NCBI RefSeq assembly: GCF_030684315.1
Contig: NC_081369.1
Location: 9,214,035-9,278,034 of the forward strand
Direction of reading: 5' to 3'
Origin: Stegostoma tigrinum
Lineage: Eukaryota
Length of the DNA: 64,000 nucleotides
Shown here: positions 5,111 to 60,600 of the stretch, piece by piece
Layout of the letters: each line of letters begins with the position of its first letter
Numbering within the stretch: the stretch's first letter is position 1
Notes under the pieces: model-generated
What the model saw: the letters and a program-made list of their open reading frames with translations, nothing else
Database searches by the model: none
Told to the model about the DNA's origin: nothing
Program-made: the position numbers and the translations under genes

Positions 5111-6779
5111 GGCACCTTAATGTGTGGTTGGGGAGGTTTGAGGGAAGGATAACATACTCCAGCTCAGTTTTCGAATGTTCCAAGAACCAGGTGGAATCGG
5201 TCTTCAGGCGCGTGTTTAAATCACCATGAACCTTGGACATAGAAGACAAAAGTTAGTGAAACAACATAGATACTGAGGAAATTAAAATACCTAATTGTTT
5301 TGCATAAAAGCTTGGGTTAGGTTAGATCTCGGAAAAAATAATGGGAACAAAACGGATATTGGATAAAATGCTGGTAAGTGTGTAAAAAGTTATTTAAAGA
5401 TTTAGGAAAATCGAAACTAAAGTATCACACTACTGGGCAAAATATTCCAATCCACCTGCTTGCCGAGAACTAAACACAAGTTTTCTGAACAGGATAATGT
5501 GTGCTCCGAACAAATTTTAATCAATCCTTTCAGACACAAAGCTACACACCAGTGGAGCAGGTGAGCCATTAATCCCGGCTTCCTGGATCAGAGTTAGGGG
5601 CACGACTACTGCACCAGCAGATCCCTACAGCATCTCCTCCACTGCACCTAGGAAAATTGCTTCACTTGCCTTTGTACGTCCAAAATTTAGCGAATATTTC
5701 GAATAGTGGATTTTCCAAAGGACAGTCACCGTTCGTTTGGATGCCACTTCTCAACAGGAAAGCATATAGGTTGCGCCCTCAACTTGCAACATACAACAGC
5801 ATTTTGTTTTCCCTTTTCAGTCAAATTTTGTTACACGTCTCCAACCAAGGCAATGTTCTTTCTGCTCAGTTTTCATTCGGTTCAAAGGCGCAAGTCTACT
5901 CTGCATGTGTTCGGCCGTGGTTGGTAATATAATCGCCCATTTGTGCACAGATGGGTAAAAGTAACGGTATCGGTAGAGCAAATGATTAATGAATTAGACC
6001 TAATTCCATGGCGTTACAGATATGATCATATTATACAAAGGCAACGAATTTCTGCTGCAGGTTTAACAAACGTGGTTCAGACTTAACTGGTGAATTGCTC
6101 ATATTTCTGAGCCAGGACAGTTTGAATGCATTTCGGAGTAGAGCTGAAACAGTTTGTAAGACTGATAAAAAAATTGAAATTCATAGCTTTTTTTGGGATA
6201 ATTATAATTCAAAGATCAAATTGCACTCAATAGATTATTTTAGAAGTGCATTCATCGTCACTAAAAATAAACGAAGCAGCCAAGATGCACTGCCAAAATC
6301 TGCAAACAGCGATCCTCTAAAAAAGACGAGGAATCTCCGTTTTCATGCTGATTGAAAGATAATTATTGGCGAGACCTCCAACAATCCCACAGCGCTTCTT
6401 TGGAAAAAAAACCCCGAAACTCTATGGATTACTTAACATCCATTCGAGTATGCAAAATGGCTTTTGTTTAATGTCACATAGGGACATTTGGGTCGAGCAA
6501 GATGAGAGTTGATTTATGCACTTGTTCAAATCATGAGAGTCCAGAAGGGAATGCATAATGGCCCATTGACCCCCTGAACTACAGTTCAAAGAACCAGAGC
6601 GTACGAAAGCCACGTCACCAAAAATTGTGGTCTAGATGGGAGAGTGACAGAGACAGACAAACCCATGTTTAGAATGAATAAGGATAGCAGTATTAGTTAA
6701 CTCTGCATTTGAAAATCAAATGCCTTTTGCTAATTTTCGCATTGCTTGGTACACATGATTTTAGATGTGACATGCACAC

Positions 6780-7012
6780 AGACATTGCAAAGTAACATTG
6801 ACCACACGAGACTCAAACTTCCAACCGCACTCAAGCGATGTTAACGTCATTGCCACGTCCCTGATAGAAAACAAACTAGAAAGCCGTCTAAGCAGTTCCG
6901 AAACGTAAGCTTTTGTGCTCCGTGGATGCTGCTTGGCCTGCTGTGTTCCTCCAGCTCCACACCTTGTTAACTCACCAGTTACGAAAGCGCGGAGCTGCTC
7001 AGCGCGATCATA
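6780..7012 (+). promoter_or_regulatory. Putative lymphoid-type proximal promoter of gene 1
   Basis: RUNX sites GACCACA (6800-6806) and AACCGCA (6823-6829), the latter directly adjacent to ETS ACTTCC (6817-6822). CRE half-site ACGTCA ~6844, GATA TGATAG ~6862, CpG-retaining. A small repeat-tail fragment sits at ~6900-6970. Confidence 0.45.
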
Positions 7013-7067
7013 ATGTCAGCGAGGATGATTTTTTTCTGCCTGACTCTACTCGAGTTTATTCTTGCTG
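7013..7067 (+). CDS. Gene 1 exon 1, signal peptide MSARMIFFCLTLLEFILA
   Basis: ATG at 7013 with A at -3, hydrophobic 18-aa leader, phase-1 donor G|GTAATT at 7068, 163-nt intron to the V exon. Confidence 0.85.
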
Positions 7068-10000
7068 GTAATTGCTTTTTTTTTGATTCACGAAACTGTT
7101 TTAATTAATTAAAGATTTTTGAAGCAGCTCTTCGTTCCATTAATTAATTCATCTATCTGGTTAAGAACTTAACTCTTCTATCTTTATGCCGAATACGACA
7201 GTTAACTATGTTTTATTTTGTTTCTGACAGCTGCGGACCACACTTGGTTGAGGGTGACTCAAACGTCTAAAGAAGCAGCTGCGAACAGACGGGAAGACAT
7301 TACCTTCTACTGTACATTCTCCATTTGTCAGCAAAGTTCAAAGCCAAATGTAATTTGGTGGAAGCAGGTTGGGAATGAACGTGTTCAGATTGAAGCCAGT
7401 GGTAGAAAACAATTTGGATTTGAAAATGAAGCAATAGCGTTCCTTAGCTTGCTGCGCGTTGATATCCAAGATTCTGGAGTTTATCACTGCACGGTGAATT
7501 ACCAAGGAATCGGTCAAAGAAGCGGAACCGGATCCCAGCTATTTGTGCGTGGTAAGTGAGAGCGACACTGTCTGAAATAATTTGAAATAACAAGATACCT
7601 TCTGATTCCTCATTTCATCAACATTGACACTCAAATCATGTCCGGCGATCATTTACGCAGGGATCTATCCTCGATATTTCTGTTCCCTTGGAAAAAAAAG
7701 TAAAATTAGACAATCAATATCACAGGTAGAAAATTGCAACGTTTATAAATATTAACAATTTACACTATAATTCTAAAGACATCCTATGCACTATGTGCAT
7801 TTTTCCGACATACAAAACTTACGATGTACATAGGCGACAAGAAACCGTTATGTCAGTACGATTCGACAACAGCTTTCAGTCCCTGGTATGTTATTGATGT
7901 CCTGACTACCCTCAATTATTCTTTCTGAGATTTGAAGACTCCAGAAATTAATTCTCACGTTAATTTCACGTCATAATTTGAAAATCAGCAGGACCTTATT
8001 TCATGAAGGAACCTCTGCAAATGAAATGCAGTTTGACAGATACAAGTAGGTAGAATCACTGACCTAGAATAAATAAAACAATACAGAGAATCTGTAGCTC
8101 CTGAGGTTCAACGGATTCATTGTGTTTTGTCAATTGAAATGCCTTGTTTTTGAAATCCGACTGATACAGTGATCTTGGCGTAATCGGCAATCTGCAACTT
8201 CACCGCCATTATGCACTTGAGCTTAAAAAAAACACCAGGGCAGACGAGCACAATTTGTTTTGTTCCTTTCTTGTGCGCTAGCTCAATTTAATTAATTTAT
8301 TCAAGTATGTGACATAAGCATTGCTAAGCATTTTGTAGTTTTGTTCTGCCGAGGAAGGCCAAGTCTTGGATTTGATAATTCAAGTAAAAGTGGATAAAAG
8401 CCGCTGCCTGGAGAGCTATTTGTTTAATTAACTGAATGTTTGTACATAAAATTAAGTTGAGAAGAAACTGCACTTCTGAGCATTGTAATTATAGGAAAGC
8501 ATAGCGTCTGTAAATCAGCCTCAAATTTAACAATTTCTGATTTGTTCCAGTAACTTGGCTTTGTTCAATCTCTGCTTGCAGTTGCTCCAGTCCCACTGAA
8601 AATTACGCCCAAGTTTCACGAAGAAAATTCACTTGTGTCTTTGACCCTTCTGTGTGAAACAGCTGCATTTCATCCGGAGGATTTCACCCTCGCCTGGTAT
8701 AAAAACGGGACGAAAACTACAGTCGGTATAAATACGAGCAAGGTGCAGAACAGTGAGGGACTGTATGAAGTATCCAGTTCTTTGGTTGATCCTCATCCTC
8801 CCTCAAGTAATCTCAAGTATACCTGTGAAATATCTCACATCTCCCTCAAGACGCCTGCTGTTGTAACCCACAGTATTTCCACATTTGGCGGATTCCAAAA
8901 AGGCGAGTTAGTTGCTGTCAGTTTTGTTACGAAATGCATCGTAGAATAGTGCAACGTGTGGGCCTAATCCGCAGTGGTTTCATGGAGATGTATTTAAATG
9001 TATTATACTAAGTTGACATCTCTGTTGTAAGAGCATCAAAACTTATTTGGTATTCTATTTCTTTGACTTTTGAAACAGTAATTATGTTCAGAATTGAGCT
9101 GATCTATCCATTTGTTTCTTCCCATCATTTTGTCCACGTTCACCTTCTTTGCCCAAGCTATGCCTACCTCTTTGTAGGTTACGTGGCACAATCCCTCTTC
9201 TGTACCTACACTGGTCCTAAACATCACTTTTTCCTCTGTTACATTGATGACTGCATTGCCATCTCCTTGTGCTCCCATGAGGAGCTCGAGCAGTTCATCC
9301 ACTTCACCCACAGACTCCCACAGCGACCTAGAATACACCTCCTCCCTGCAAAATACCCACCTTCCTGCAAAAATGCCATTCCCTCCTCCCAATTCCTTTG
9401 TCTCTGCCACATCTGCTCCGAGGATGAGGCATGATGATGACGAGGATGATGTCCTCATTTTTCAAGGACCGCAACTTCCCTGCTCAATGGTTGAGAATGC
9501 CCTCGACGGTGTCTCCCGCATTTCCCACAACTCATCCCTCACACATCCTCCCTGCAAAAACAACCAAAACAGAATCCCCCTCATCCTCATGTACCACCCC
9601 ACCAACCTCCTGATCCAATGCATCATCTTCCGACACTTCCGCCATCTGCAATCCGACCCCACCCTTAAAGACGTTTTTCCCACCCTCATCTGCTTTTTGG
9701 AGGGACCACTCTCTCCATGAATCCCTCGTCCGCTCCACACTCCCCTCCAGCGCTACCACACCGACACTTTTCCCTGCAACCACAGGAAGTGCTACACCTG
9801 CCCCTACACCTCCCCCTTCACCCTCATCTCAGGTCCCAAGAAGACTATCCACATCAAGCAGATGTTCACCTGCACATCTGCTAATGTGGTATGCTGATCC
9901 ACTGTTCCTGTTGTTGCCTCATCTACATCGGGGAAACCACGCGGAGGCTTGGGGGCCACTTTGCAGAACACCTATTCTCAGTTCGCACTAAACAACTGCA

Positions 10001-13000
10001 CCTCCCAGTTGCGAATCTTTTCAACTTCCACTCCCGTTCTGCAGGTGACATGCCCATCCTGGGCCTCCTGCAGTGCCGCAACGATGCTACCTGAAGGTTG
10101 CAGGAACAGCGTCCTATATTTCACTTGGGAACCCTGCAGCCCAATGGTATCAATGTGGACTTCACAGGCTTCAAAATCTCCCTCCCCCACTGCATCCCCA
10201 AACCAGTCACTTTCTGGATTACCCCAATCCAGAACTTGAAGTGGACAGTTGAGGAAATGCTTGTGATATCATTCCTCTAAATTTAAGAAAGCATAATTAG
10301 TAAGTAAGAAAGCTCAAGAACAACAGTATTTTGATTCATGGGGAATTGACTTATCTCATATTCCTACCTTTCCGAAACAGTCCTTTGTGTTCCATAAATT
10401 GACAATCTATTCCAGAGATTGATTCAGAATTTGCCATGTTGGATCAAGAATTCACTTCGATATTTAACAGAAATAATCTTTGGCAGTTCAGCTTTTTCAT
10501 TGTCCTTGAATAGCGCTGTGCAGTTGAAAATATCATCACATTTTAAGCAAAGATCTAAAGTGACAATATTTTTAATTTAATGATCACATGCAAATAATGT
10601 CTTCTTTATCCTGCAGACAGTATCAACAATTCACTGGTCATCTGGTCTTCAGTTCGTTATGTGATTTTCTCGGCGCTTGTTGTAATTCTGTTCGTGTTTG
10701 GGACTGCAAAGTACTTGAGGATATCAGAAGTAAGGTCTACTATCAAAGCCTGCTTTTCGCACAGGGCCTGGGTTAATTTGCCATTTCTGGAAAACAAGCA
10801 GGATACTTATTAGGGATAATTCGAATTGGTTGAAGACTGAAAAATGCAATCATTTTGTTCTTTTTTCCCCCGCAAACGTGGATTGCTCCAAAGCCACTTA
10901 AAAACACAAGAAGGTTCTTGGAAACATGAGTGAACCATTCAGCCCCTTTGGGCCTGTTCTGCCATTCAAAGAGATCATGGCTGATGAATGGCTTAACTCT
11001 ATATCCTTGTCCCTAAATACTTTGCTTAACAAAAATAAATCGATCCCAGATTTAAAATTAAAATTAACTTCTATTTGTTGAAAAGTCTTGCAAACATGTG
11101 CATAGAAGAGCTTCCTCACATCTTTCTTGAATGATCTTGTTGCAAGTTTTAGAGTATGACCACCAGTTCTAGAATCCACAACCAGCAGAAGTAGTATATG
11201 TTACTGACAAAGTGTGAAGAGGGTCTTCGGTCCGCCTCCTCCTCTCTCCCTATTTATTTCAGAACCCTCACCCTATCCCCCTCTCTGACGAAGGGTCTAG
11301 GCCCGAAACATCAGCTTTTGTGCTCCTGAGATGCTGCTTGGCCTGCTGTGCTCATCCAGCTTCACACTTTGTTATTTGGATTCTCCAGCATCTGCAGTTC
11401 CCATTATCACTGATACTATATTACTGACACTCTCTTTTGCTGTTAATGTCGTAAAGCCTTCAATTAGATCATCTCTCAACCTTCTAAATTAGAGAGAAAA
11501 TAGTCTTAGTTTGTATAATCCCTCCATGTAATTAAATCCCTAAAGTCCACAATTATCATTCTGGTAATTGTACATCATACTCCTTCCAAGGTCAATGCAC
11601 CTTTCCTGTGGTATGCTGCTCAGAACCGTTCACAGCTCATCAAAATGTTTTCAAATGTAAACAATGCTCACATGTGTTAATTTCCAAAGGCACATTTCAG
11701 TTTTCAACATGAGAAATGAAATTTATCACAATAAATATGAAATAGGTAATTCGATGCTTCTGTCAAGTAATGATTGCTCCTTGAACGAATGGAGGATTAA
11801 TAGCAGATTCTGATGTTGCAACCGTCTGATCTCTGCGAGCAACATAATCAAATGTATTCTGCCTCAACGGAACATTCACATCCTTTCTCTAATACTTTGA
11901 TTCAGAAAAATGCGCTCATTTTCTGCATGGAAACTGAGTCAATATTTTCATCACTCAATGCAATTATATTTCATTGGTTTGCAGGTAAAGAAGAATGCAC
12001 AAGGCAATCAGACTGCCATGTCAATGTGGTAAGTTCATATCATCATCATGCTTGGAGTTTGAAATGTCTGGATCAATGGCAATAATGGAAGAAATATACA
12101 TTAATAATGACAGAACATTTTATATCTATTTATTGAAAGACTATTCATCTGGTATGTGTGTGTTTCAGAGCCAGGTTTGAAGCGCAATTTGTACAACTTG
12201 TATTACTGATGAAGGTTGGCAAGTGGATCTTCTTTAAAAAAAACCGTAATCATATCTTTGAGAATGTTGCAAGGTTGAGTCACGTTTTAGGGTTGAGAAC
12301 AAATTTACTGTCTAAACCCATTGCATCTAACACTTAACATTATGTTTCAGCATGAATATGAGGAAGTTTGAATTGTTGCATTGAACACTGAGATTAACAT
12401 TGTCTTCATGCGTATATATCTATAATATGGATTCTGTAAGGGATGTCGAGTCTTGGTTAAATATGCTTAGTCCTTGATGTAGAAAATCTTCGAGACAATG
12501 AAAAGGACACTTATTGAAGTGTTGTTCTTGTCCTCACAGGAAGCCATGGCGGAGGTTTCCTGCAATAGACTTAGGCAAAAACAGGAGAACTCCTAGACAT
12601 ACGTTTGAAATAGAGAAAAACATGCCTATTGAGGTAGGGCGGAGTGGGAGAACACAAAATCAGGATAAAATTGTGATTCAAGATAATAAAATGTGAGGCT
12701 GGATGAACACAGCAGGCCAAGCAGCATCTCAGGAGCACAAAAGCTAATAAAATGTGAGGCTGGATGAACACAGCAGGCCAAGCAGCATCTCAGGAGCACA
12801 AAAGCTACTTGGCCTGCTGTGTTCGTCCAGCCTCACATTTTATTATCTTGGATTCTCCAGCATCTGCAGTTCCCATTATCTCTAAAATTGTGATTCAGCC
12901 TGACAATGAAGGCATTTGCTTCTATGGACATTAGCCAAATGTCATTTTGAAGCCTATTTTTGTGTCCTTCTGATTAGTGCTTTGCAGAAAGTTTATAAAA

Positions 13001-13194
13001 AAGGCCAATTAATAACATTTCCAAATAATATCTTTACAGCTCTCCATGTTGCTATCGGCAGTAAGATGACATACAGTCCTCTAATGTTCTCTGTTTCTGC
13101 GAAGAAGGCACAGAGATTGCTTGAGCTGCAGACTGAAAAACAAAACAAAGTAACTGAAGATATCCATGCACAAGCAAGAAATAACAAGCCTTAA
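7013..13194 (+). CDS. Gene 1 (whole span, 7 exons): non-rearranging VJ-C1-TM-cytoplasmic IgSF receptor (NKp30/NCR3-, SIRP-, NITR-like 'VJC1' type), ~384 aa
   Basis: Exons 7013-7067, 7231-7551, 8582-8902, 10617-10729, 11985-12028, 12540-12633 and 12988-13194 sum to 1155 nt = 385 codons. They join in frame (phases 1,1,1,0,2,0) with no internal stop. The first four exons are strong; the cytoplasmic exons are less certain. Confidence 0.85.
7231..7551 (+). CDS. Gene 1 exon 2, Ig V-set domain with germline-joined J-like G strand
   Basis: Acceptor TTTCTGACAG| and donor G|GTAAGT, phase 1/1. Motifs VTQ, ITFYC, VIWWK, FLSLLRV, DSGVYHC and J-like SGTGSQLFV (ORF 7218..7559). Confidence 0.95.
8582..8902 (+). 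CDS. Gene 1 exon 3, Ig C1-set domain
   Basis: Acceptor CTTGCAG| (an alternative in-frame AG lies 9 nt downstream). C1 motifs LTLLCETAAFHPEDFTLAWYKNG, NSEGLYEVSSSL, YTCEISHISL. Phase-1 donor AAG|GCGAGT (GC type). Confidence 0.93.
9110..10205 (+). mobile_element. Penelope-like element (RT fragment + GIY-YIG endonuclease) in gene 1 intron 3
   Basis: FFLCYIDDCIA...EELEQFIHFT (RT YIDD) and CCLIYIGETTRRLGGHFAEH...PVAN (GIY-YIG); internally deleted and frameshifted. Confidence 0.85.
10617..10729 (+). CDS. Gene 1 exon 4, transmembrane exon DSINNSLVIWSSVRYVIFSALVVILFVFGTAKYLRISE
   Basis: Polypyrimidine acceptor CTTTATCCTGCAG|. Phase-1 entry gives a ~25-aa hydrophobic stretch with Arg (CGT 10655-10657), followed by basic KYLR. 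Donor GAA|GTAAGG. Confidence 0.85.
10905..11640 (-). mobile_element. CR1-type LINE 3' fragment interrupted by a Penelope-tail insertion (~11210-11420)
   Basis: ORF 10898..11179 (SRTGGHTLKL...DVRKLF). The insert is flanked by TTACTGACA direct repeats at 11201 and 11421. Confidence 0.65.
11985..12028 (+). CDS. Gene 1 exon 5, short cytoplasmic exon (VKKNAQGNQTAMSM-W)
   Basis: Acceptor GGTTTGCAG|, strong donor TG|GTAAGT, 44 nt, open in the phase required by exon 4. Confidence 0.6.
12540..12633 (+). CDS. Gene 1 exon 6, cytoplasmic exon (KPWRRFPAIDLGKNRRTPRHTFEIEKNMPIE)
   Basis: Acceptor TTCTTGTCCTCACAG|, donor GAG|GTAGGG. Only the phase-2 entry, which exon 5 supplies, is stop-free. Confidence 0.55.
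12681..12882. mobile_element. Penelope-tail hairpin insertion with internal tandem duplication and 15-bp TSD
   Basis: Two tandem ~60-bp units followed by an inverted copy. TAAAATTGTGATTCA at 12666-12680 and 12883-12897. Confidence 0.8.
12988..13194 (+). CDS. Gene 1 terminal exon with ITIM-like MTYSPL motif
   Basis: Acceptor TGCTTTGCAG| in phase 0 enters ORF 12916..13194 (...KMTYSPLMFS...TEDIHAQARNNKP*). Alternative acceptor at 13040. Two AATAAA signals follow. Confidence 0.6.
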   Translation, partial: KVYKKGQLITFPNNIFTALHVAIGSKMTYSPLMFSVSAKKAQRLLELQTEKQNKVTEDIHAQARNNKP

Positions 13195-13286
13195 ACATTT
13201 CAAGGCAAAAGATTATTCTTGGACTTGGACTGATCACAATCGTTTGCACTTAGAGCTTCAGGCCTGCACAGTCTCACCTCTGTGCG

Positions 13287-13308
13287 AATAAAGCATTACC
13301 GCAATAAA
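13287..13308 (+). terminator. Tandem polyadenylation signals of gene 1
   Basis: AATAAA at 13287-13292 and 13303-13308, about 100 nt after the TAA stop. Confidence 0.6.
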
Positions 13309-13431
13309 GCAGATAGACATAGCGAGTACCTATCCTTTTAATGGCCAATTAATCCCTATTATTGGTTTTTAAGAACACCAACAACCTGCTTTGAAAGTAT
13401 GTTTGAAAGACACTTTGCTTGAAGCAGAGTA

Positions 13432-13890
13432 AATGAGAATTGCAGGAGAATCCAAGATAACAAAGCATGAAGCTGGATGAACACAGCAGGCCCAGCAGCA
13501 TCTCAGGAGCACAAAAGCTGGCATTTTGGGCCTAGACCCTTCATCAGAGAGGGGGATGGGGAGAGAGTTAGGGTTAGAGTTAAACCCTAACCCTATCGCC
13601 TGTCCCCATCCCCCTCTCTGAAGAAGGGTCTAGGCCTGAAACGTCAGCTTTTGTGTTCCTAAGATGCTGCTGGGCCTGCTGTGTTCATCCAGCTTCACAC
13701 TTTGTTATCTTGGATTCTCCAGCATCTGCAGTTCTCATTATCTCTGATCACAATTTTAACCGCACTGTGAAGCCTCTTCCAGGGATGCCTAACCTGAAGA
13801 AGTTACCTTCCTCTCACTGGACCAACCTTAGGGAATCTCTCTCCAACTGCAACTCTCTTGTCCACCTATCTTCTCCTCTATCCATCTTCA
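13432..13890. mobile_element. Penelope-tail hairpin (long inverted arms) plus adjoining element sequence
   Basis: ~13432-13560 is the reverse complement of ~13600-13745; the apex contains telomere-like TTAGGG...CCCTAA. Confidence 0.75.
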
Positions 13891-18011: not shown

Positions 18012-19050
18012 CTCAATAGACAATAGGTGCTGGAGTAGGTCATTCGACCCTTCGAGCCAGCACCACCATTCATTATGATCATGGCTGATCATCCACTATC
18101 AGTATCCTGTTCCTGCCTTATCCCCATAACCATTGATTCCACTATCTTTAAGAGCTCTATCCATCACTTTCTTGAAAGTATCCAGAGACTTGGCCTCCAC
18201 TGCCTTCTGGGGCAGAGCACTCCACATATCCACCACTCTCTGGGTGAAGAAGTTTTTCCTCAACTCTTGTTCTAAATAGCTTACCCCTTATTCTTAAACT
18301 GTGTCCTCTGGTTCTGGACTCACCCATCAGCGGAAATATACTTCCTGCCTCCAGAGTGTCCAATCCCTTAATAATCTTATATGTCTCACGCAGATCCCCT
18401 CCCATCCTTCTAAACTCAAGGGTATACAAGCCCAGTCGCTCCGATCTTTCAACCTATGACCGCCCTCCCATTCCGGGAATTGACCTCGTGAACCTATGCT
18501 GCACTCCCTCAATAGCAAGAATGTCCTTCCTCAAATTTGGAGACCAAAACTGCACACGATACTCCAGATGCGGTCTCACCAGGGCCCTGTACAGCTGCAG
18601 AAGGACCTCTTTGTTCCTATACTCAATTCCCCTTGTTATGAAGGCCAGCATGCTCTTAGCTTTCTTCACTGCCTGCTGTACCTGCATGTTTGCTTTCATT
18701 GAATGATGTACAAGAAAACCCAGATCTCGTTGTACTTCCCCTTTATCTAATTTGATCCCATTTAGATAGTAATCTGCCTTCCTGTTGTTGCCACCAAAGC
18801 GGATAACCACACATTTATCCACATTAAACTGCATCTGCCATGCATCCGTCCACTCACCTAGCCTGTCCAAGTCACCCTGTATTCTCATAACATCCTCTTT
18901 ACATTTCACACTGCCACCCAGCTTTGTGTTATCAGAAAATTTGCTAATGTTACTTTTAATGCCTTCGTCTCTATCATTAATGTATATTGTAAACAGCTGC
19001 GGTTCCAGCGCCGAACCTTGTGGTACCCCACTGGTCACCGCCTGCCATTG
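18012..19050 (-). mobile_element. CR1-type LINE, 5'-truncated, relatively young
   Basis: ORF 18454..19131 (VTSGVPQGS...FTIYIND...SKFSDNTKLGG...LYRALVRPHLEY) and ORF 18157..18429 (ESRTRGHSLRI), with 3' UTR to ~18012. Confidence 0.92.
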
Positions 19051-20324
19051 CGTTCTCCAGAGTTTTGTTACTGAAGAATTCGGGAGTTGAAATCTTAGAG
19101 AATTCTGCTTTTCAAAGTTATGGTGTGACATTATTGATGATCATTTAGACTCTTTCATTGGCAATATTGACGACTGCTGTGGAGCCATCAAGCCTGCAGC
19201 TTGCCTCCTTAGCCGAAGTAGCTTCCCTGTTCCCCGTTACATTTGCCACGGATTGCCTGCTTGAAACACAACTTCCTGCAATCAGCTGCTTAAATTCTTC
19301 CACGAGAAAATAATTTCTCCTGGTGGTGTAATACCACCAGTTGTGAAGCCGGTATTAAAGTGATATTGTTATGTAAATTCGACTTCTCTTTTTCCAATGC
19401 ATAGCTAATTGCTTTCAATTCCCGATTTGTCCTTGTCCCTTAACGATTATATTCCGGGTTATTGTCAGTTCTTTCAACCTATGAACACTAATGAACGTTC
19501 TGAAGTTTACATTATTACAATGACATTTCACTGAAGATGGAAAACTTTGAAACGTTTTCGACTTTAAATACCGAAAGTGTAAAGTGTGGGGAAAAAGCCA
19601 AAACGTTAGGTCTGTGATAATTTTAGAGGCAGTAGAGATTAAACAGTAAAAAGAGAGTTGGCCTTGCAAGGCCAGTCGGTCGCATTAAAGTGGTATAGTT
19701 GGATGTATAAGAACATGAGCAACTGCAGTCTTATCAGGAAAACCTGAGTGGAATATCGGGAAAATGGGTCAGTTGAAAAGATTGTGTAGAAGGGCTGTTA
19801 ATGGGAGACCAATGAATATTTACTTTACAAACCAAAAGAAAGGTGTGGACGACCACAACAGCAACAACAAGCTTGCCATGTGAAAGGAAATGAATTGGGA
19901 GTGCGATTTGGAGATTATCTTTTGCTCCGTGTTTCCCATTTTTATGAGGGAACATTGCCAAGCTGCTGTGCAGCTCTGTAAGGTGGCGGCAACAGACATC
20001 AAGGCGTCATTTACTTTTGCTTTCCACTGAGTGACAGTAATGGCCACTGTGATACCTTTAAATTGGCCCGTGTTTTAATCTCTTACCTCTACCCTCTGTT
20101 GCGTCACTTACTTGCCGCTAAACCTGTCCTCCAATCAGTCAGGGCCAACTTCAGGGGACATTGTGCCTAAAGATGCCTTCCTTCTCAGCATGCCGTTTGG
20201 ACCCAGAAAGTGTTCCGATGCAAATACAAGTGAAAATCCTCAATGTATAATATCTGTTCACCATTTGTCATTTTCTTATTTCCTATGATAACATTTTAAA
20301 CTGTGTGATAGCACTACGTTATTA

Positions 20325-34600: not shown

Positions 34601-34869
34601 GTACATGTCTTCAATTCAACAACTGCTAGATAGAAAAAGCTGTAAAATGTGTAGGTGATATTAACTATGTATGGGCATGACTATTTATGCTGATGTTGCG
34701 ACAAGCTCTTTATGGAGTTTCTGGCCTTTCAGTGGAAGGGATACATCTGTGCAATCATAACTGCTGCTCCTGAGCCCTAGTTGTTCCCTTGTTTGCTGCT
34801 ACAAGTTCCCGACACTCTGTCGTTCTCTTGTAAATAAATGTTTCGTATTTTTGTTTGTTTTTGCAACAG

Positions 34870-35157
34870 TTGCCGCTCGTATGACTCAATTTCTGCGATC
34901 GCCCAATGTAACAGTAAGACAGACCGTGACTTTTCACTGCTCGTTGCTGCTATTCCGAGGTAGGAACCAAGTCGTGGTGCGTTGGTGGAAAGCTGGTGAC
35001 CAGGAATTCTTGAACTCAAAACAAGATTCCTGGAGAGTGTTTCACATTGAGAACGAAGCCAGCGCAAACCCACAATGTGCGTTTTAGAAATGTTGGCATC
35101 TGTTATTGCAGTTTGAACAGACTGGAAATGGAATCGGCATACAGCTGAATGTAAGCG
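34870..35157 (+). pseudogene. Pseudogene 2 VJ exon, paralogue of the gene 1 V domain
   Basis: Acceptor TTTTTGCAACAG|. Reads MTQ...TVTFHC...VVVRWWKAG...FHIENEASA; after frameshifts NVRFRNVGICYC and TGNGIGIQLNVS. Donor mutated to G|GAGAGT. Confidence 0.85.
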
Positions 35158-37961
35158 GAGAGTAATCAACCCCAGCGACTTTGAAAATACGGCAGTTAGA
35201 TGGACAGGAAGTTTGAAATGGCAGCTCTTCTGCTAATGATAATGCAAATGATTATTAATTTCTCCCCTATTACGGTAGGCTGAGAGAACACCCAGTGTGC
35301 AGCGGGCTAATGTATATGGAAAGGTGGAACAGCTTGGGTGCAGCATTCCCCAACATTACTCAGTGGCCGCAGGAAGTTGGCGCTCTTGTTGCTAAAATTT
35401 CAAATCGAAAAACTAGATGTTCAGCAATTGTCAGTGCAAAGCAAGAGGGGAAGTTGGCTACCACATGCTTCTGCTTAAGCTGCTATTTCGAAATCTTATA
35501 CCGCTGGTAGTCAAATGCATTTTTCAAAATGTACAACTCACAGCCTTCTCTGACTCACAATTCGAATTGTGATCTTAAATTAAGTGACCCATTATCGCCC
35601 ACCATCCACCCAGTGAAATCGCCAACTTATTCCAGACCATCCTTTACATGAGAATGAAACCCGCGACTTTCGAATACAATTCAAACATTTCATTGCTAAC
35701 CCCTTGTTGGGGATGTCCGAAATGAAAGTCACACACTTACCAATACCACAGCTAGATGTCTGCGGATCAGAATTATTTGAAACCCTATGCGTTCAACATT
35801 CCATCAGTTTTGCAAGAAAAGTTGAAAAGATTTCTGCAGGTTGGCGGCTTCGATAAATCCACTCACGTTGAATTATGCAATCCTGCATCCGAACCATTCT
35901 GCAAGAGGGAGGGAAGGAAACATACATACGAAGTTCGTGAGATCGTGAAAAATTCGGTTTCTTGCCAAGGAAACATTTAACAGAGTTAGAAAAACAGAAG
36001 CGAGAATAAGCGGTATTGTTAAAACCCAAACAAATAACCTGGGCGCGGCGGGTGAAGACTATTTGATTTTATTTTTTTCTCTCGTTGTGACCATAGAAAC
36101 AAATGGAGATTTTCTTTTTTCTCTTGTTGGGTATCTGGAGCGAAATGTTTTTTTTAATTTCTCAACGTGTCACTCCAGCTAGCCAGCTATATTATTCTCA
36201 GGAATTCATAGGAAACATACACAGGAACATGAAGGAGTTTCAAAGTAATTATGGCCAGATTATGGCAATCAGACAATCTTGGTTATTGCTCACTTCTTGA
36301 CCATCAAGCATCGACTATATGAACTGTACCTGTCGCTCTGCTGTCTTGATTTCATTTTTTAACCTGGATTTGCATCTTGGCGCAGGATCCAACATGGTTC
36401 GTGTAACACCAAGTGTAACGATTCAATTACTCTTTGTATGGCCAAAATACAATAACGAACCTCTGTGCTCACTTTGCATCTGTCCCAAGTAGCATTGTAA
36501 TTGAGATTATCCATTTAACGCAACTGCAAAAATTCAGAAAATCTTCCTGTCACTCTTAACTGTTATTGTGAAATATTGAAGAAACCGTACTCCATTGACT
36601 GCCCAAAGCTGTGTGTTAAAGTAGTCATTTGACCAAACACAGAGATTATACGTGAGAGAATTGCCTCTTTAACTAAAGGTATAAACACTATTTGAAGCCT
36701 TGCTGAAGCCGTCATTTTGGGAGTGACAATTATGGGTGAGTCGTCCTGTGTGAGAAGGGTTTGCAAGTCTTTAGTTCTTAAGAAGGCATCACTGGACTCG
36801 AAACATCAAATGGTGCCAAACCAGTTGAGTTTCGCCAACAATGTCTTCTTTTGCTTCAGATCTTTGGCATTCACAGTTCTTTGTTTTGTTTATTTAAAGT
36901 TTTCTTCACCACATGCGAGCGTTTCTGCATGTGTTGTCAGTGAAACACCAATTGGATGGGCTTCAAATCTCGGTTGTTTTTTTTAGAAAAGAAATCTTCA
37001 GGGTCGTAGCACATAGCATTCCAATCAGAATATTTAGTACCTAAATGACAAAAATGTTTAACCATACAGCTTCCAGTCAAATATGCAGTCATTCCAAATT
37101 TGCAGCAATTCAGAATGTTCAACTCTAACCACATTTTTCACAGCATTTCAAAGCTTGAATGAATTGAACAGTTCAAATGACCAGGCAATGATTAGGGAAG
37201 AAAGATCAAGAACTGATTTTGAGAACTTGTAGTTTTAATCATCACGATCAAGCTGGCTATTTCATTTGTGATACACACCTTTTGGTGTGTATTTTTTATA
37301 TAAGCTGACAACTAGTTTTTCTTTTCACTCCCATAATACGTTTTGATGCTGGTGTCTCTTAAAATACTGTCAGTACAATGTCTGGAAGCTAACCATATCA
37401 AATTCACCCATCATTAAATTGCAGGATCTGATCAGATTATCCAGGCTTCAGTATTTCCATTTTATTGGCAGGGTTGGAATGTATATAATTAATAGTATCA
37501 GTAATCAGCCCAATAATTCATCTCTTGTCCATGGTTCCAAGCTATTGTTTCATCGAAGAATGTTTTGCATTGCTGAGAGTGTAGCTTGCAAAGCCTAGAA
37601 TTTGCATAGATGCAATGGGGAAATAGACTGTTCAGCTCCCCTAGATATTGTTAAATGTAAGGACGTAAAAAGCAGAAACTGCTGCATAGCATTTAATGCT
37701 ACAATTCTTTTCAATATCCATTCATTCCTTTGGTCCCACTGAGATTATTGATCTCAATCTTGACTAAATTCAACAAATGGACATCCACGACCCCTAGGAT
37801 TCGAAACTGTCTGGCCTTTGATCAGAGATCACAGCCATGGGGAATACTTTCCAATCTAACCATTCCCTCAAAATATTTTGCATGTTTCAATTAGATCAAC
37901 TCTAAATCTTGCCAATTCTGGGCAGTAAAGGAGCAATTTGCACAAACTTTTCAAAGGACAG

Positions 37962-51024: not shown

Positions 51025-51590
51025 CATAGAACATACATCGAACATTACAGCACAGTACAGGCCCTTCGGCCCTCGATGTTGTGCCGACCTGTCATACCAA
51101 TCTGAAGCCCATCTAACCTACACTATTCCATGTATGTCTGTATGCTTATCCAATGATGACTTAAATGTACCCAAAGTTGGCGAATCTACTACCGTTGCAG
51201 GCAAAGCGTTCCATTCCCTTACTACTCTCTGAGTAAAGAAACTACCTCTGACATCTGTCCTATATCTTTCACCCCTCAATTTAAAGCTATGCCCCCTCGT
51301 GCTTGCCGTCACCATCCTAGGAAGAAGGCTCTCCCTATCCACTCTAGCTAACCCTCTGATTATTTTATATGTTTCAATTAAGTCACCTCTCAACCTTCTT
51401 CTCTCTAATGAAAACAGCCTCAAGTCCCTCAGCCTTTCCTTGTAAGACCTTCCCTCCATACCAGGCAACATCTTAGTGAATCTCCTCTGCACCCTTTCCA
51501 AAGCTTCCACATCCTTCTTAAAATGCGGTGACCAGAACTGTACGCAATACTCCAAGTGCGGCCGCACCAGAGTTTTGTACAGCTGCAGCA
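51025..51590 (-). mobile_element. Young CR1/HER1-type LINE 3' end
   Basis: Uninterrupted ORF 51118..51606 (LQLYKTLVRPHLEYCVQFWSP...TRGHSFKL...FFTQRVV); nearly identical to 63690-64000. Confidence 0.92.
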
Positions 51591-52219
51591 GTGGTAATGC
51601 TGGCACTCACATTCAACTCTGGACAAGAAAGAGTTATTACCTCTGTCAAACACGAACTCTGATCTCTCTCTCTCCCCTTCAAGATTTATAAATATTGAGA
51701 AAATCACAGTGCAGCTTCACATTCCAAGATAAAAGGGTGACTTTTGTTTTTATTTTCAGTGTTCTCTTTACCAGTGATCCCTCCTTTTTGTTTTGATACA
51801 AATGGGCCCTTTGGATCATTTGCTATCCCCAAGTTAAAATTATGGGCTGCCCCATGGTAAATTAATAATGTATTAACATGGTACCTTTAACTCGTTTCAT
51901 CTCTATATTTCTCGCTGTAGCTTGGGGTCTGGTCCTTGAATGCAATCATCCCTTGCAACCTTCTACAACTGTTTTTGCTTCAGTCAAAAGCGTTGTGGTT
52001 CCCTGTTACTATCCTCTTCATCAAGTAATTGATTTATCAGTCTCTGGGGCTTTGTCTTTGTGAACAGCTCCAGGGATCATTAACTAGCTAACACATGCCA
52101 GAAAATTTGGCAATGTTGGTCAGTTCCGACAGTCCAAAGCGAGTGGCATAGTTAATATCTTGATCTGTCCATCCTCTGCTCTGTCTTGTTACTACAGATG
52201 CCATCGGAGCGGATGGACA

Positions 52220-59670: not shown

Positions 59671-60284
59671 AGCTGCTGAAGAAGTCAAACCTTTTTTCCC
59701 CTCTCTTGCTTCCTGCTAGAAAGTGGGGTTTCTCTTCATTCTACAAATGTTGCATGTAGGAAAGCCTGATTTTTGAATTTGCCTTTTTGCCAATGGCTAT
59801 GGTTATGGGATTTTACTATATTAGAGCAGTGAATTAGTAATGGTTGCTCTATTTATTTTCTGTTAAGTTTTCCAGTAGAATTGTTATTCCAAGTTCTTCC
59901 TTCTTTTGTTGAATTTAAACTATAGTTTTGAATACATTGTGTTTTGCTTAATATCAACTAGATTGACCATTCCAATTGCATTTGGACACAGCATCTCCCA
60001 TTTACCGTTAAAATAAGAAAATGTTAGGTTCTGGGCTCAAAAGCAGAAATTGCTGGAATAGCTCAGCAGCTCTGGCAGCATCTGTGGAGATAGAACAGAG
60101 TGAGTGCTTTGGTTCAAGTTATCTTTCCTCAGAACTGAGGGTCTACATTACATTCTTAATACATTTTGACGGCTGGTCCATAGCAGTTGTCCTTGTGAAT
60201 ATGCACATCCATTGTTTTTACTTCCTCTCCTTTAGAGGATTGTGTAGACAAGTATAACTGCTGTTAGTATTCATTGACTCACAG

Positions 60285-60600
60285 TTACTATTGATGTATC
60301 TGTTCAATTAAAACAAGGCCCTGAAATCATGACTGCCACCAAAAACCGAGCCATTACCTTCTCCTGCACATTCCCTCTTCTGAAATAATCTAGCAGTGAA
60401 TGTTTGCTTGATGAATCTTGGTGACACGACAATGCTGGGAACAGGACTAAATGAAGGAAAGAATTTCACACCAAAAAGGGCAATGGCTCTTTGCAGCTGC
60501 TCAACATTAAGTGTGAAAGATGCATGGATCTATTTCTATGGAGTGTCATTTTAAAGCAAAGTAATTGGTAACTGGATTGCATCTCTGTTCATTGCACATG
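60285..60600 (+). pseudogene. Pseudogene 3 VJ exon, paralogue of the gene 1 V domain
   Basis: Acceptor GACTCACAG|. Reads VQLKQGPEIMTATKNRAITFSCTFP*; across frameshifts KKGNGSLQLLNI, SVKDAWIYFYGV (decayed DAGIYFC) and VIGNWIASLFIAH (decayed GNGxGSxLxV). Donor mutated to G|ATATGT. Confidence 0.8.

What the first reader, a model, noticed from the sequence alone, without database searches (positions are those of the whole stretch)
7013..13194. Intact non-rearranging TCR/Ig-like receptor: germline-joined VJ + C1 + TM + signalling tail
Seen: the V exon ends in a J-like strand (SGTGSQLFV vs FGxGTxLxV) within the same exon, with no RSS. It is followed by a genuine C1-set exon, a TM exon and a multi-exon tail. 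Established: VJ+C1 is the architecture of TCR/Ig light chains; outside antigen receptors and MHC, C1 domains are rare (tapasin, SIRP, B7-H6-type molecules), and germline VJ domains typify NKp30 and teleost NITRs. Inference: this is a poorly characterised cartilaginous-fish innate (NK-type) receptor resembling the proposed pre-RAG ancestor of antigen receptors.
Basis: partly seen in the sequence, partly recalled or inferred. Interest (0 to 1): 0.85.

Follow-up and report, generated by a model that had tools for sequence, protein, structure and literature searches.

The report
Zebra shark germline VJ-C1 receptor gene
This is a real, sequence-intact zebra-shark gene for a non-rearranging antibody-like surface receptor, but it is one copy of a large shark and ray gene family already present in public annotation under misleading names, and its signalling tail looks degenerate.

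Summary
Seven + strand exons (7013-13194) give an open 384-codon frame with consistent phases:
- a split leader;
- a V exon that carries its own J-like G strand, with no RSS;
- a C1-set exon (Pfam 2e-10);
- a TM exon, three tail exons, and AATAAA 93 nt after the stop.

Caveats:
- C1-to-TM splicing needs a GC donor.
- No RNA run was available, so no junction is confirmed by transcripts.
- RefSeq already models this gene in Stegostoma tigrinum. P0166, "H-2 class II ... A-Q beta chain-like", has V and C1 100% identical to the window. That model stops by read-through after C1.

The gene belongs to a multigene family that my searches found only in cartilaginous fish. Its members are auto-named SIRP-, tapasin-, NCR3LG1-, Ig-lambda- or MHC-II-like. 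This scan has already met the family several times on other DNA of this genome.

Against its ITIM-bearing paralogue P0152, the ectodomain is 92-96% identical and the TM exon only 29%. The TM edge carries an Arg, and four or five family tyrosine motifs are replaced. My best reading is the non-inhibitory, activating-like partner of a paired-receptor cluster. It is not a unique relic of the pre-RAG ancestor.

The parts
7013..7067 (+). Leader (signal peptide) exon, ATG at 7013, phase-1 donor GTAATT
   Evidence: Translation MSARMIFFCLTLLEFILA. 17 of 19 residues match the N-terminus of the paralogues P0003 and P0152. Splice signals.
7231..7551 (+). V exon with built-in J-like G strand (…SGTGSQLFVR), phase 1-1, no RSS
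   Evidence: Pfam V-set, I-set and Ig_3. 100% identical to RefSeq P0166. Family motifs WWK, DSGVYHC and GTGSxLxV. No RSS. pLDDT mostly above 90 in the AlphaFold model.
8582..8902 (+). C1-set exon, phase 1-1. Its donor at 8903 is GC (AAG|GCGAGT). If unspliced, the frame reads on to a stop at 8947-8949 (GELVAVSFVTKCIVE*)
   Evidence: Pfam C1-set 2e-10. PDB hits to Ig C, UrIg2 and SIRP C1 domains. The junction position equals that of paralogue P0152 (…GGFQK|E). The read-through tail equals the RefSeq models P0003, P0151 and P0166. No read variant was listed at 8903-8904 (19 differences were not shown).
10617..10729 (+). Transmembrane exon (SINNSLVIWSSVRYVIFSALVVILFVFGTAKYLRISE) with Arg at the outer edge of the hydrophobic core; phase 1-0
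   Evidence: Translation. The best 21- and 23-residue hydropathy windows include the Arg; the 17- and 19-residue windows start just after it. 10 of 35 residues identical, in register, to the TM exon of P0152, where the Arg position is Ser. Strong acceptor and GTAAGG donor.
11985..12028 (+). Cytoplasmic exon 5 (44 nt, phase 0-2)
   Evidence: Canonical AG and GTAAGT. The model frame gives VKKNAQGNQTAMSM. The +2 frame gives KEECTRQSD, 8 of 9 identical to P0152, which is the family's conserved frame.
12540..12633 (+). Cytoplasmic exon 6 (94 nt, phase 2-0); a former ITIM position now reads RRFPAI
   Evidence: Aligned with P0152 QYSAVHF…THTFQTERNM, 7 of 24 identical. Splice signals.
12988..13194 (+). 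Last coding exon (68 codons plus TAA); holds KVYKKG, NIFTAL and MTYSPL
   Evidence: Open frame in phase with exon 6. Aligns with the tails of P0152, P0016, P0161 and P0127.
13287..13308 (+). Two AATAAA polyadenylation signals 93 and 109 nt after the stop
   Evidence: No AATAAA or ATTAAA occurs between 8940 and 10620, i.e. in the C1-TM intron.

Best explanation
What it is: the window comes from the zebra shark Stegostoma tigrinum. The feature is one tandem copy of a cartilaginous-fish multigene family of non-rearranging immune-type receptors. The architecture is a split leader, one V domain with a germline J-like G strand, one C1-set domain, a TM segment and a cytoplasmic tail.

How the family works (inferred from sequence): it runs as a paired-receptor system. 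Some members have long tails with several ITIM/ITSM-type tyrosine motifs. Others have a basic residue at the outer edge of the TM helix and short tails without motifs.

This copy (inferred): it is the non-inhibitory, activating-like type.
- Its ectodomain is almost the same as that of an ITIM-bearing paralogue, so it would see the same or a similar ligand.
- Its TM exon has diverged and carries an Arg. By analogy with SIRP-beta, NKp30/NKp46 and activating KIR, that Arg would recruit an ITAM adaptor with a TM Asp.
- Its tail is still open but has lost four or five ancestral tyrosine motifs.

Possible second product (speculative): the GC donor after C1 may let some transcripts read through into a 15-residue secreted tail.

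Shown versus inferred: exon structure, domain types, family membership, absence of RSS, and the contrast between ectodomain and TM divergence are shown. Splicing, expression, adaptor pairing and ligand are inferred.
For: Gene model:
- Seven exons with consistent phases, 384 codons, canonical splice signals apart from one GC donor that otherwise fits the consensus perfectly, and AATAAA after the stop.
- C1-set and V-type domains (AlphaFold mean pLDDT 84.3).
- No RSS.

Identity: V and C1 are 100% identical to RefSeq P0166 of S. tigrinum.

Family:
- The V-exon search of 1.84 billion representatives gave 176 proteins at E<=1e-3.
- All 20 V-C1-type clusters looked up are chondrichthyan.
- All 6 of 6 hits, 18 of 18 and 34 of 34 are chondrichthyan.
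- In the tree of 33 rows the window gene sits with three Stegostoma paralogues (100/98 support). That group lies inside a clade (94/97) holding Heterodontus, Heptranchias, Mustelus, Scyliorhinus and Hypanus members.

Paired-receptor signature, against the ITIM paralogue P0152:
- V 97 of 106 identical.
- C1 102 of 106 identical.
- TM exon only 10 of 35 identical.
- Exon 6 only 7 of 24 identical.

TM Arg and tails:
- The Arg lies just after a conserved Trp, as in the short-tailed members P0212, P0213, P0023, P0207 and P0025. ITIM-bearing members have I, G, V or A at that position.
- Crude count over 44 distinct TM-bearing family proteins. With R/K at the outer TM edge: 7 of 19 have an ITIM-like motif, median tail 36 aa. 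Without: 16 of 25, median tail 79 aa.
- Lost tyrosine motifs are documented.
Against: - There is no transcript evidence at all. No RNA run was found, and the contigs laid are DNA.
- RefSeq's model of this gene (P0166) and of two paralogues (P0003, P0151) ends by read-through after C1 and omits the TM and tail. P0166 also starts with a 46-48 residue N-terminus that is not encoded in the window and is not a signal peptide.
- The C1 donor is GC, not GT.
- The Arg may lie at the membrane boundary rather than inside it, since the 17- and 19-residue hydrophobic cores exclude it.
- The tail is long (113 codons after the TM exon). It keeps one ITIM-like MTYSPL, unlike the typical short-tailed R-forms.
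- The R/K-versus-ITIM association is crude and modest.
- No adaptor gene was examined.
Confidence: 0.55

Rival explanations
1. Secreted V-C1 protein. The GC donor is not used, translation runs 15 codons into the intron (GELVAVSFVTKCIVE*), and the TM and tail exons are relics of an ITIM-bearing ancestor.
For: - The RefSeq models of this gene and of two paralogues all end this way (P0166, P0003, P0151).
- P0003 stands for three XP accessions.
- The donor is GC.
- The tail tyrosine motifs are degenerate, and exon 5 is out of the family frame.
Against: - No AATAAA or ATTAAA lies in the 1.7 kb between the read-through stop and the TM exon, while two AATAAA follow the last exon.
- All five downstream acceptors and donors are intact and in compatible phases, and about 150 downstream codons stay open.
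- Apart from the C, the GC donor matches the consensus at every position.
- Gene predictors rarely call GC donors without RNA support, so the read-through models may be artefacts (my knowledge, not tested).
Confidence: 0.22
2. Inhibitory or dual-signal receptor. The remaining MTYSPL motif, perhaps with KVYKKG, still recruits SH2 phosphatases, so the gene signals like its ITIM-bearing relatives despite the Arg.
For: - MTYSPL aligns with the canonical VTYTTL of P0152 and LTYATL of P0161.
- The tail frame is kept open over three exons.
- Another first-stage note on this same stretch proposed such a dual design (s1-881741).
Against: - Met at -2 is outside the (I/V/L/S)xYxx(I/V/L) consensus (recalled).
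- Four or five other family tyrosines are replaced by F, F, L and H.
- Ectodomain identity of 92-96% with an ITIM paralogue alongside 29% TM identity is the usual signature of an activating or decoy partner.
Confidence: 0.13
3. Unexpressed or decaying copy (young pseudogene) in a rapidly turning-over cluster.
For: - No RNA evidence.
- The RefSeq model has an aberrant N-terminus.
- The donor is GC.
- Two clearly dead V exons of the same family lie downstream in the window, at 34815-35189 and 60278-60599, with stops and frameshifts.
Against: - There is no stop, frameshift or lost splice site in any of the seven exons.
- The canonical Cys, Trp and Tyr-x-Cys residues of both domains are kept.
- The AlphaFold model is confident.
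Confidence: 0.1

Closest known systems
SIRP family (SIRP-alpha / -beta / -gamma)
   Same: - The V domain has a germline J-like GxG G strand and is followed directly by a C1-set domain.
- Members are paired: ITIM tails versus a basic TM residue with a short tail.
- SIRP-alpha D1-D2 is the best-scoring solved V-C1 unit against the family profile: 70.6 bits, one stretch over profile positions 25-216.
- Many family members are auto-named SIRP-alpha-like or SIRP-beta-1-like.
   Different: - Only one C1 exon is present. SIRPs have two (my knowledge), and tblastn finds no second C1 in the gene.
- The score is tied with Ig lambda (67.6) and kappa (66.0).
- The TM residue is Arg at the outer edge, not the Lys of SIRP-beta (recalled).
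- Orthology and CD47-type ligand binding were not tested.
[quoted passage not shown] 2019, J Immunol 202:1992)
   Same: As far as I recall, and from the title and citing passages only, PRARPs are non-rearranging IgSF genes listed among joined-VJ domains (passages in PMC10751288, and PMC11599192). Earlier agents of this scan proposed that the shark family is their counterpart.
   Different: - The paper is not held, so I could not read its definition.
- None of my searches returned a tetrapod V-C1 relative.
- The seven non-chondrichthyan V hits that I looked up (turtles, lizard, gecko, frog, Polypterus) did not match the family's C1 motif in my regex screen. That is not a rigorous domain test.
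- The link is therefore untested here.
UrIg / UrIg2 (elasmobranch non-rearranging antigen-receptor-like genes; PMC12227049)
   Same: A single-exon VJ with a split leader, followed by C1-type domains, and no rearrangement. UrIg2 (PDB 9dmx) is the second-best whole-chain match of the family profile (1.2e-36).
   Different: - UrIg has three C domains and is secreted. Nurse-shark UrIg2 has nine C domains (sections 4 and 7 of the paper).
- The UrIg2 V(part)-C1 unit scores 56.9 bits, lower than SIRP-alpha or Ig light chains.
- The paper contains no occurrence of SIRP or PRARP. The sections I read (4, 7, 13, 16) do not describe this family.
Ig light chains / TCR chains
   Same: V + C1 two-domain layout, a GxG bulge motif, and phase-1 exon boundaries. 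All 50 listed Foldseek matches are antibody Fab chains aligned over both domains (E about 3e-15).
   Different: - There is no RSS and no separate J segment, and no F/W before the GxG.
- The rigid-body fit to Fab chains is poor: rmsd 9-10 A, TM 0.32-0.46.
- The modelled extended V-C arrangement fits B7-H6, PD-L2 and butyrophilin better, at Z 15-17 and rmsd 2.6-3.7 A. Interdomain geometry in a monomer model is weak evidence.
NKp30 (NCR3) and B7-H6 (NCR3LG1)
   Same: NKp30 is a germline VJ receptor with a TM Arg (recalled). Several family members are auto-named NCR3LG1-like. B7-H6 is the top two-domain structural match (Z 17.2).
   Different: NKp30 has no C domain (recalled). The rows from Z 14 to 17 are effectively tied, so the B7-H6 match shows only a shared V-C layout.

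Membership tests
Chondrichthyan germline VJ-C1 receptor family (auto-named SIRP-like / tapasin-related-like / NCR3LG1-like / Ig-lambda-like) | V domain with WWK in strand C, DSGVYxC in strand F and GxG[ST]xLxV in strand G | tested here: met
   The window V has IWWK, DSGVYHC and GTGSQLFV. These columns are invariant or at least 90% conserved in the alignments of 24 and 41 members.
Chondrichthyan germline VJ-C1 receptor family (auto-named SIRP-like / tapasin-related-like / NCR3LG1-like / Ig-lambda-like) | A single C1-set domain with the motifs CxTAxFxP, WYKNG, GLYEVSS and YTCxxSH | tested here: met
   The window C1 has CETAAFHP, WYKNG, GLYEVSS and YTCEISH. Pfam C1-set 2e-10. It is 42-61% identical to the C1 of the shark members P0016, P0167, P0023 and P0033.
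Chondrichthyan germline VJ-C1 receptor family (auto-named SIRP-like / tapasin-related-like / NCR3LG1-like / Ig-lambda-like) | Groups inside the family in a tree | tested here: met
   33 rows. It falls with three Stegostoma paralogues (100/98), inside a 94/97 clade with five other shark and ray members. Five rows (P0168, P0074, P0049, P0042, P0010) entered as V-only 110-aa pieces because of my cutting rule. There is no outgroup; the root is a midpoint.
SIRP family | Three Ig domains: V followed by two C1-set domains | tested here: not met
   Only one C1 exon lies between V and TM. tblastn of the C1 exon finds only itself in the window.
SIRP family | Closer in sequence to SIRPs than to other V-C1 proteins | tested here: inconclusive
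   With the family profile: SIRP-alpha V-C1 70.6 bits, Ig lambda 67.6, Ig kappa 66.0, UrIg2 56.9. No tree with SIRPs could be built, because no SIRP sequence was available as a stored protein.
Rearranging antigen receptors (Ig/TCR) | V segment ending in an RSS, with a separate J segment | tested here: not met
   The J-like strand lies in the V exon, which ends at a splice donor. There is no heptamer or nonamer in 6500-13500 and no RSS-like pair in the window.
UrIg / UrIg2 | VJ followed by three or more C1-type domains | tested here: not met
   One C1 exon only. The definition comes from PMC12227049, sections 4 and 7.
PRARP | Homology to chicken PRARP genes | not tested
   The paper is not held. 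No tetrapod V-C1 hit appeared, and no PRARP sequence was available.
MHC class II beta chain (the RefSeq name of this gene) | An N-terminal peptide-binding beta-1 domain before the C1 domain | tested here: not met
   The N-terminal domain is an Ig V-type domain. Only the C1 domain resembles MHC II membrane-proximal domains (Z 14.7-14.8). The name is a misnomer.
Activating partner of a paired receptor (functional class) | An ectodomain near-identical to that of an inhibitory paralogue, a basic TM residue, and no ITIM | tested here: inconclusive
   Ectodomain 92-96% identical against 29% for the TM exon. The Arg lies at the outer TM edge. One ITIM-like MTYSPL remains, and the tail is long.

The most novel reading that the evidence does not exclude
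The zebra-shark cluster is a paired-receptor system at the base of jawed vertebrates. Near-identical germline VJ-C1 ectodomains, kept alike by gene conversion and diversifying in V, are wired either to ITIM tails or to an Arg-TM.

This copy would be caught part-way through an inhibitory-to-activating conversion: a new Arg, a frame-shifted exon 5 with a compensating change, and tyrosines replaced one by one.

Its weak GC donor after C1 would give a secreted versus membrane choice, analogous to Ig heavy-chain secreted/membrane RNA processing.

On this reading the family, rather than SIRP or UrIg alone, would be a living model of how a pre-RAG VJ-C1 receptor signalled.
Probability: 0.15. Interest if true: 0.7.

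Novelty: new member of a known kind. Interest (0 to 1): 0.38.

Why it matters
Non-rearranging VJ-C1 genes bear on what the RAG transposon invaded. This family shows that sharks hold many such genes besides the published UrIg and UrIg2, organised as inhibitory and activating-like pairs. RefSeq names them misleadingly; this copy is called an MHC class II beta chain.

This single copy adds little beyond the family, which the scan has already met several times in this genome. Its particular value is as a test case in three respects:
- a TM Arg combined with a still-open tail that has lost its tyrosines;
- a GC donor at the C1-TM junction;
- a V exon that differs from a paralogous or allelic copy at 15 of 371 letters, while the adjacent intron differs at 0 of 422.

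Tried and rejected
Transcript evidence. The look-up of sequencing runs (kind rna) returned only 4 runs of one sample, none recorded as RNA, each holding 0.66-0.69 of the words across exons and introns alike. Read laying on 7200-13199 showed DNA contigs and repeat-driven joints, with no exon-exon joint. The splicing question stays open.

I could not read the donor sites or TM exons of P0003, P0151 and P0152. I also could not check the chromosome context or synteny with the MHC.

PRARP link. The paper is not held. Full-text searches gave only citing passages. My three word-indexed protein searches and the exhaustive V-exon search returned no tetrapod V-C1 protein. I neither confirm nor refute the earlier agents' PRARP proposal.

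Trees against SIRP, NKp30, NITR, tapasin, TCR and IgL were not possible. No reference sequences could be obtained as stored proteins, and I did not type any from memory.

Literature on this shark family.
- Searches found no open paper describing it.
- Subscription papers and supplements were not visible. These include the PRARP paper, the 2023 UrIg paper, and table S1 and the supplementary figures of PMC12227049. Any of them may bear on this.

Rejected readings.
- An MHC class II beta chain, the RefSeq name: there is no beta-1 domain.
- A UrIg member: one C domain only, and a lower score.
- A rearranging segment: no RSS.
- My first tail model, with the last exon starting at 13040, gave a premature stop. 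I replaced it with the acceptor at 12987/12988, which restores the frame and the 384-codon total.

Weak results.
- dN/dS between the window's V exon and the read-derived variant was 1.38, against 0.45 for C1. That rests on 15 and 5 differences, too few to carry weight.
- The Foldseek and VIA matches do not discriminate among IgSF V-C families.

The joined 384-aa model was never assembled, printed or searched. Exons were translated and searched one by one, and RefSeq's own V-C1 protein P0166 was used for alignment, tree and structure.

Full report
**What is in the sequence.**

On the + strand between 7013 and 13194 lie seven exons:
- Leader, 7013-7067.
- V, 7231-7551.
- C1, 8582-8902.
- TM, 10617-10729.
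- Three cytoplasmic exons: 11985-12028, 12540-12633 and 12988-13194.

Their lengths sum to 1155 nt, which is 384 codons plus TAA. The phases (1,1,1,0,2,0) are mutually compatible.

Every acceptor has a pyrimidine tract and AG. Every donor is GT, apart from the C1 donor, which is GC in an otherwise perfect context (AAG|GCGAGT). A weak in-phase GT donor at 8873 is an alternative.

Two AATAAA signals lie 93 and 109 nt after the stop. No AATAAA or ATTAAA lies between the end of C1 and the TM exon.

**Domains.**

The V exon translates to 106 residues ending SGTGSQLFVR.
- It matches Ig-domain models. Pfam I-set scores 29.9 bits and V-set 26.5 bits against a cut-off of 26.
- Atlas places V-set clusters first.
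- Its best single-domain solved relatives are weak: CD79b at 6e-4 and TCR-alpha at 3e-3.

The J-like strand is part of the V exon, which ends at a GTAAGT donor. No RSS heptamer or nonamer occurs between 6500 and 13500. No heptamer-spacer-nonamer pair occurs anywhere in the window.

The next exon is a true C1-set domain.
- Pfam gives 2e-10, 41.3 bits against a cut-off of 21.
- PDB hits are to Ig constant domains, UrIg2, SIRP and MHC.
- All ten best named Atlas clusters are C1-set.

An AlphaFold model was built from RefSeq's own V-C1 protein with 41 family sequences. It has mean pLDDT 84.3, with 10 strand segments in V and 8 in C1.
- Foldseek's 50 listed matches are all antibody Fab chains aligned over both domains. 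The rigid-body fit is poor, at rmsd 9-10 A.
- The representative-wide search puts B7-H6, PD-L2 and butyrophilin-like V-C pairs first, at Z 15-17.
- It also lists CD79b for V (Z 15.2, rmsd 1.6 A over 93 residues) and MHC class II membrane-proximal domains for C1 (Z 14.7, rmsd 1.2 A over 92 residues).
- These rows are effectively tied and show only the fold class.

**Whose gene it is.**

The exhaustive V-exon search found P0003 at 92% identity. A follow-up search found P0166. P0166 is a 276-aa RefSeq protein of Stegostoma tigrinum named [quoted passage not shown].

P0166 contains the window's V translation exactly. It also contains the C1 translation, including 15 read-through codons, exactly. 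So the window is zebra shark and this gene is already annotated.

- It starts with 46-48 residues that are not encoded in the window and do not look like a signal peptide.
- It ends by reading through the GC donor to the stop at 8947-8949.

Two paralogue models (P0003, P0151) end the same way. A third, P0152 (363 aa), splices at the same position (…GGFQK|E…) to a TM and an ITIM-bearing tail.

**The family.**

- Of 176 proteins at E<=1e-3, the single-V, 200-500-aa hits share the layout V, C1, TM and tail.
- All 20 V-C1-type clusters that I looked up are from sharks, rays or chimaera. Their names include SIRP-alpha-like, SIRP-beta-1-like, tapasin-related-like, NCR3LG1-like, Ig lambda-1-like and MHC II beta-like.
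- Three further searches returned only chondrichthyan proteins: 6 of 6, 18 of 18 and 34 of 34.
- Ten more distant V hits were also looked up. Seven are from turtles, lizards, a frog and Polypterus, and these did not match the family's C1 motif in my regex screen.

The alignments show invariant or near-invariant WWK, DSGVYxC, GxG[ST]xLxV, PxPL, CxTAxFYP, WYKNG and YTCxxSH. The window copy keeps all of them.

In a tree of 33 rows the window gene groups with the three Stegostoma paralogues (100/98). That group sits inside a clade with Heterodontus, Heptranchias, Mustelus, Scyliorhinus and Hypanus members (94/97). Five rows were V-only pieces, there was no outgroup, and the root is a midpoint.

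Earlier follow-ups in this scan reached the same family on other DNA of this genome.

**Relation to known families.**

With a family profile, the best solved V-C1 units score as follows:
- SIRP-alpha D1-D2: 70.6 bits.
- Ig lambda: 67.6 bits.
- Ig kappa: 66.0 bits.
- UrIg2 V(part)-C1: 56.9 bits.

This is a tie between SIRP and light chains.

- SIRPs have two C1 domains. This gene has one.
- UrIg has three C domains and UrIg2 has nine (PMC12227049, sections 4 and 7).
- The PRARP paper (Fu et al. 2019) is not held. I saw only its title and two citing passages and found no tetrapod V-C1 relative. The PRARP link proposed by earlier agents is untested here.
- I found no open paper that describes this shark family. 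Subscription papers and supplements were not visible.

**The TM and tail of this copy.**

Against the ITIM-bearing paralogue P0152:
- The V exon is 97 of 106 identical.
- The C1 exon is 102 of 106 identical.
- The TM exon is only 10 of 35 identical, in register and without gaps.
- Exon 6 is 7 of 24 identical.

The window has Arg where P0152 has Ser, four residues after a conserved Trp. The best 21- and 23-residue hydrophobic windows include this Arg. The 17- and 19-residue windows begin just after it.

Short-tailed family members (P0212, P0213, P0023, P0207, P0025) have Arg at the equivalent edge. ITIM-bearing members have I, G, V or A there.

A crude count over 44 distinct TM-bearing members gave the following:
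- With R/K at the outer edge: 7 of 19 have an ITIM-like motif, with a median tail of 36 aa.
- Without: 16 of 25 have one, with a median tail of 79 aa.

The tail stays open but is degenerate. Family motifs are replaced as follows:
- VQYSAV by RRFPAI.
- IEYTAV by NIFTAL.
- TEYAQL by QRLLEL.
- TGYMEA by DIHAQA.

Only MTYSPL remains, aligned with VTYTTL.

Exon 5 is 8 of 9 identical to P0152's KEECTRQPD, but in a frame offset from the one the model uses. The model returns to the family frame in exon 6. This implies a phase change at the TM exon and a compensating 1-nt difference in exon 5 (with phases). That step is an inference, because I could not read the paralogue's DNA.

**Reads.**

The four runs are one sample and behave as DNA.
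- Their V-exon contig differs from the window at 15 of 371 letters. It translates exactly to P0003's V, with 9 amino-acid changes across 10 codons hit.
- The adjacent intron (7568-7989) differs at 0 of 422 letters.
- The TM-to-exon-6 contig differs at 7 of 1259 letters.
- dN/dS is 1.38 for V and 0.45 for C1. The counts are too small to carry weight.
- No variant was listed at the GC donor. One search left 19 differences unshown.

**Reading.**

Most likely this is a membrane receptor of the non-inhibitory, activating-like class within a paired cluster. It would share its ligand-binding ectodomain with an ITIM-bearing neighbour and couple through the TM Arg to an ITAM adaptor.

Rivals are a secreted V-C1 product, a residual inhibitory function through MTYSPL, or a silent young pseudogene. 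Transcript data decide among them.

The claim of a special, poorly characterised relic is only partly right. The gene is one of many, it is already annotated (though misnamed), and it is no closer to antigen receptors than SIRP is.

**Limits.**

- No RNA runs were found.
- Supplements were closed.
- No reference sequences were available for SIRP, PRARP or NKp30 trees.

Noticed in passing
window 34815-35189 (+): A dead V exon of the same family, of the lysine-rich-tail subfamily. It is 42-45% identical to P0177 (Stegostoma) and P0115 (Hemiscyllium). It has an internal stop, and the F-strand piece (HNVRFRNVGICYC) sits in another frame. No C1 or TM exon was found after it.
   Followed up: partly
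window 60278-60599 (+): A second V-like pseudo-exon of the family, with at least three in-frame stops. It shows weak matches to P0033, P0041 and P0086 (E 5.6e-5 to 1e-3).
   Followed up: partly
window 7200-7570 versus 7568-7989: In the DNA runs the only V-exon contig differs from the window at 15 of 371 letters. It encodes exactly the V of paralogue P0003, with 9 amino-acid changes including G to P in the GxG motif. The neighbouring intron is identical at 0 of 422 letters. This may be gene conversion between copies, a divergent allele, or contig collapse of paralogues.
   Followed up: partly
window 6840-7066 (+): The region just upstream of and including the leader exon aligns with the N-terminal part of a Chiloscyllium punctatum 'hypothetical protein' (P0010). 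That model seems to read through the 5' UTR, so the promoter-proximal region may be conserved between orectolobiform paralogues.
   Followed up: no
window 9000-10200, 11200-11420, 12640-12880: Very high-copy repeats inside the introns, with summed contig depth from 5e4 to above 2e6 in the DNA runs. The element at 12680-12880 consists of two direct copies followed by an inverted copy of the same SINE-like head. It also occurs at 11290-11380 and 13460-13700.
   Followed up: no
window 18454-19131 (-), 51118-51606 (-), 62146-63605 (+): Long ORFs that look like reverse-transcriptase (LINE-type) sequence by eye; I ran no domain search on them. Besides the receptor gene, the two pseudo-V exons and repeats, I recognised no other gene. 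I did not screen the window for other genes.
   Followed up: no
window 8903-8949 (+): The 15-codon read-through tail after C1 (GELVAVSFVTKCIVE) is identical in three RefSeq paralogue models and has a Cys four residues from its end. Whether it is a real secretory tail is unknown.
   Followed up: partly
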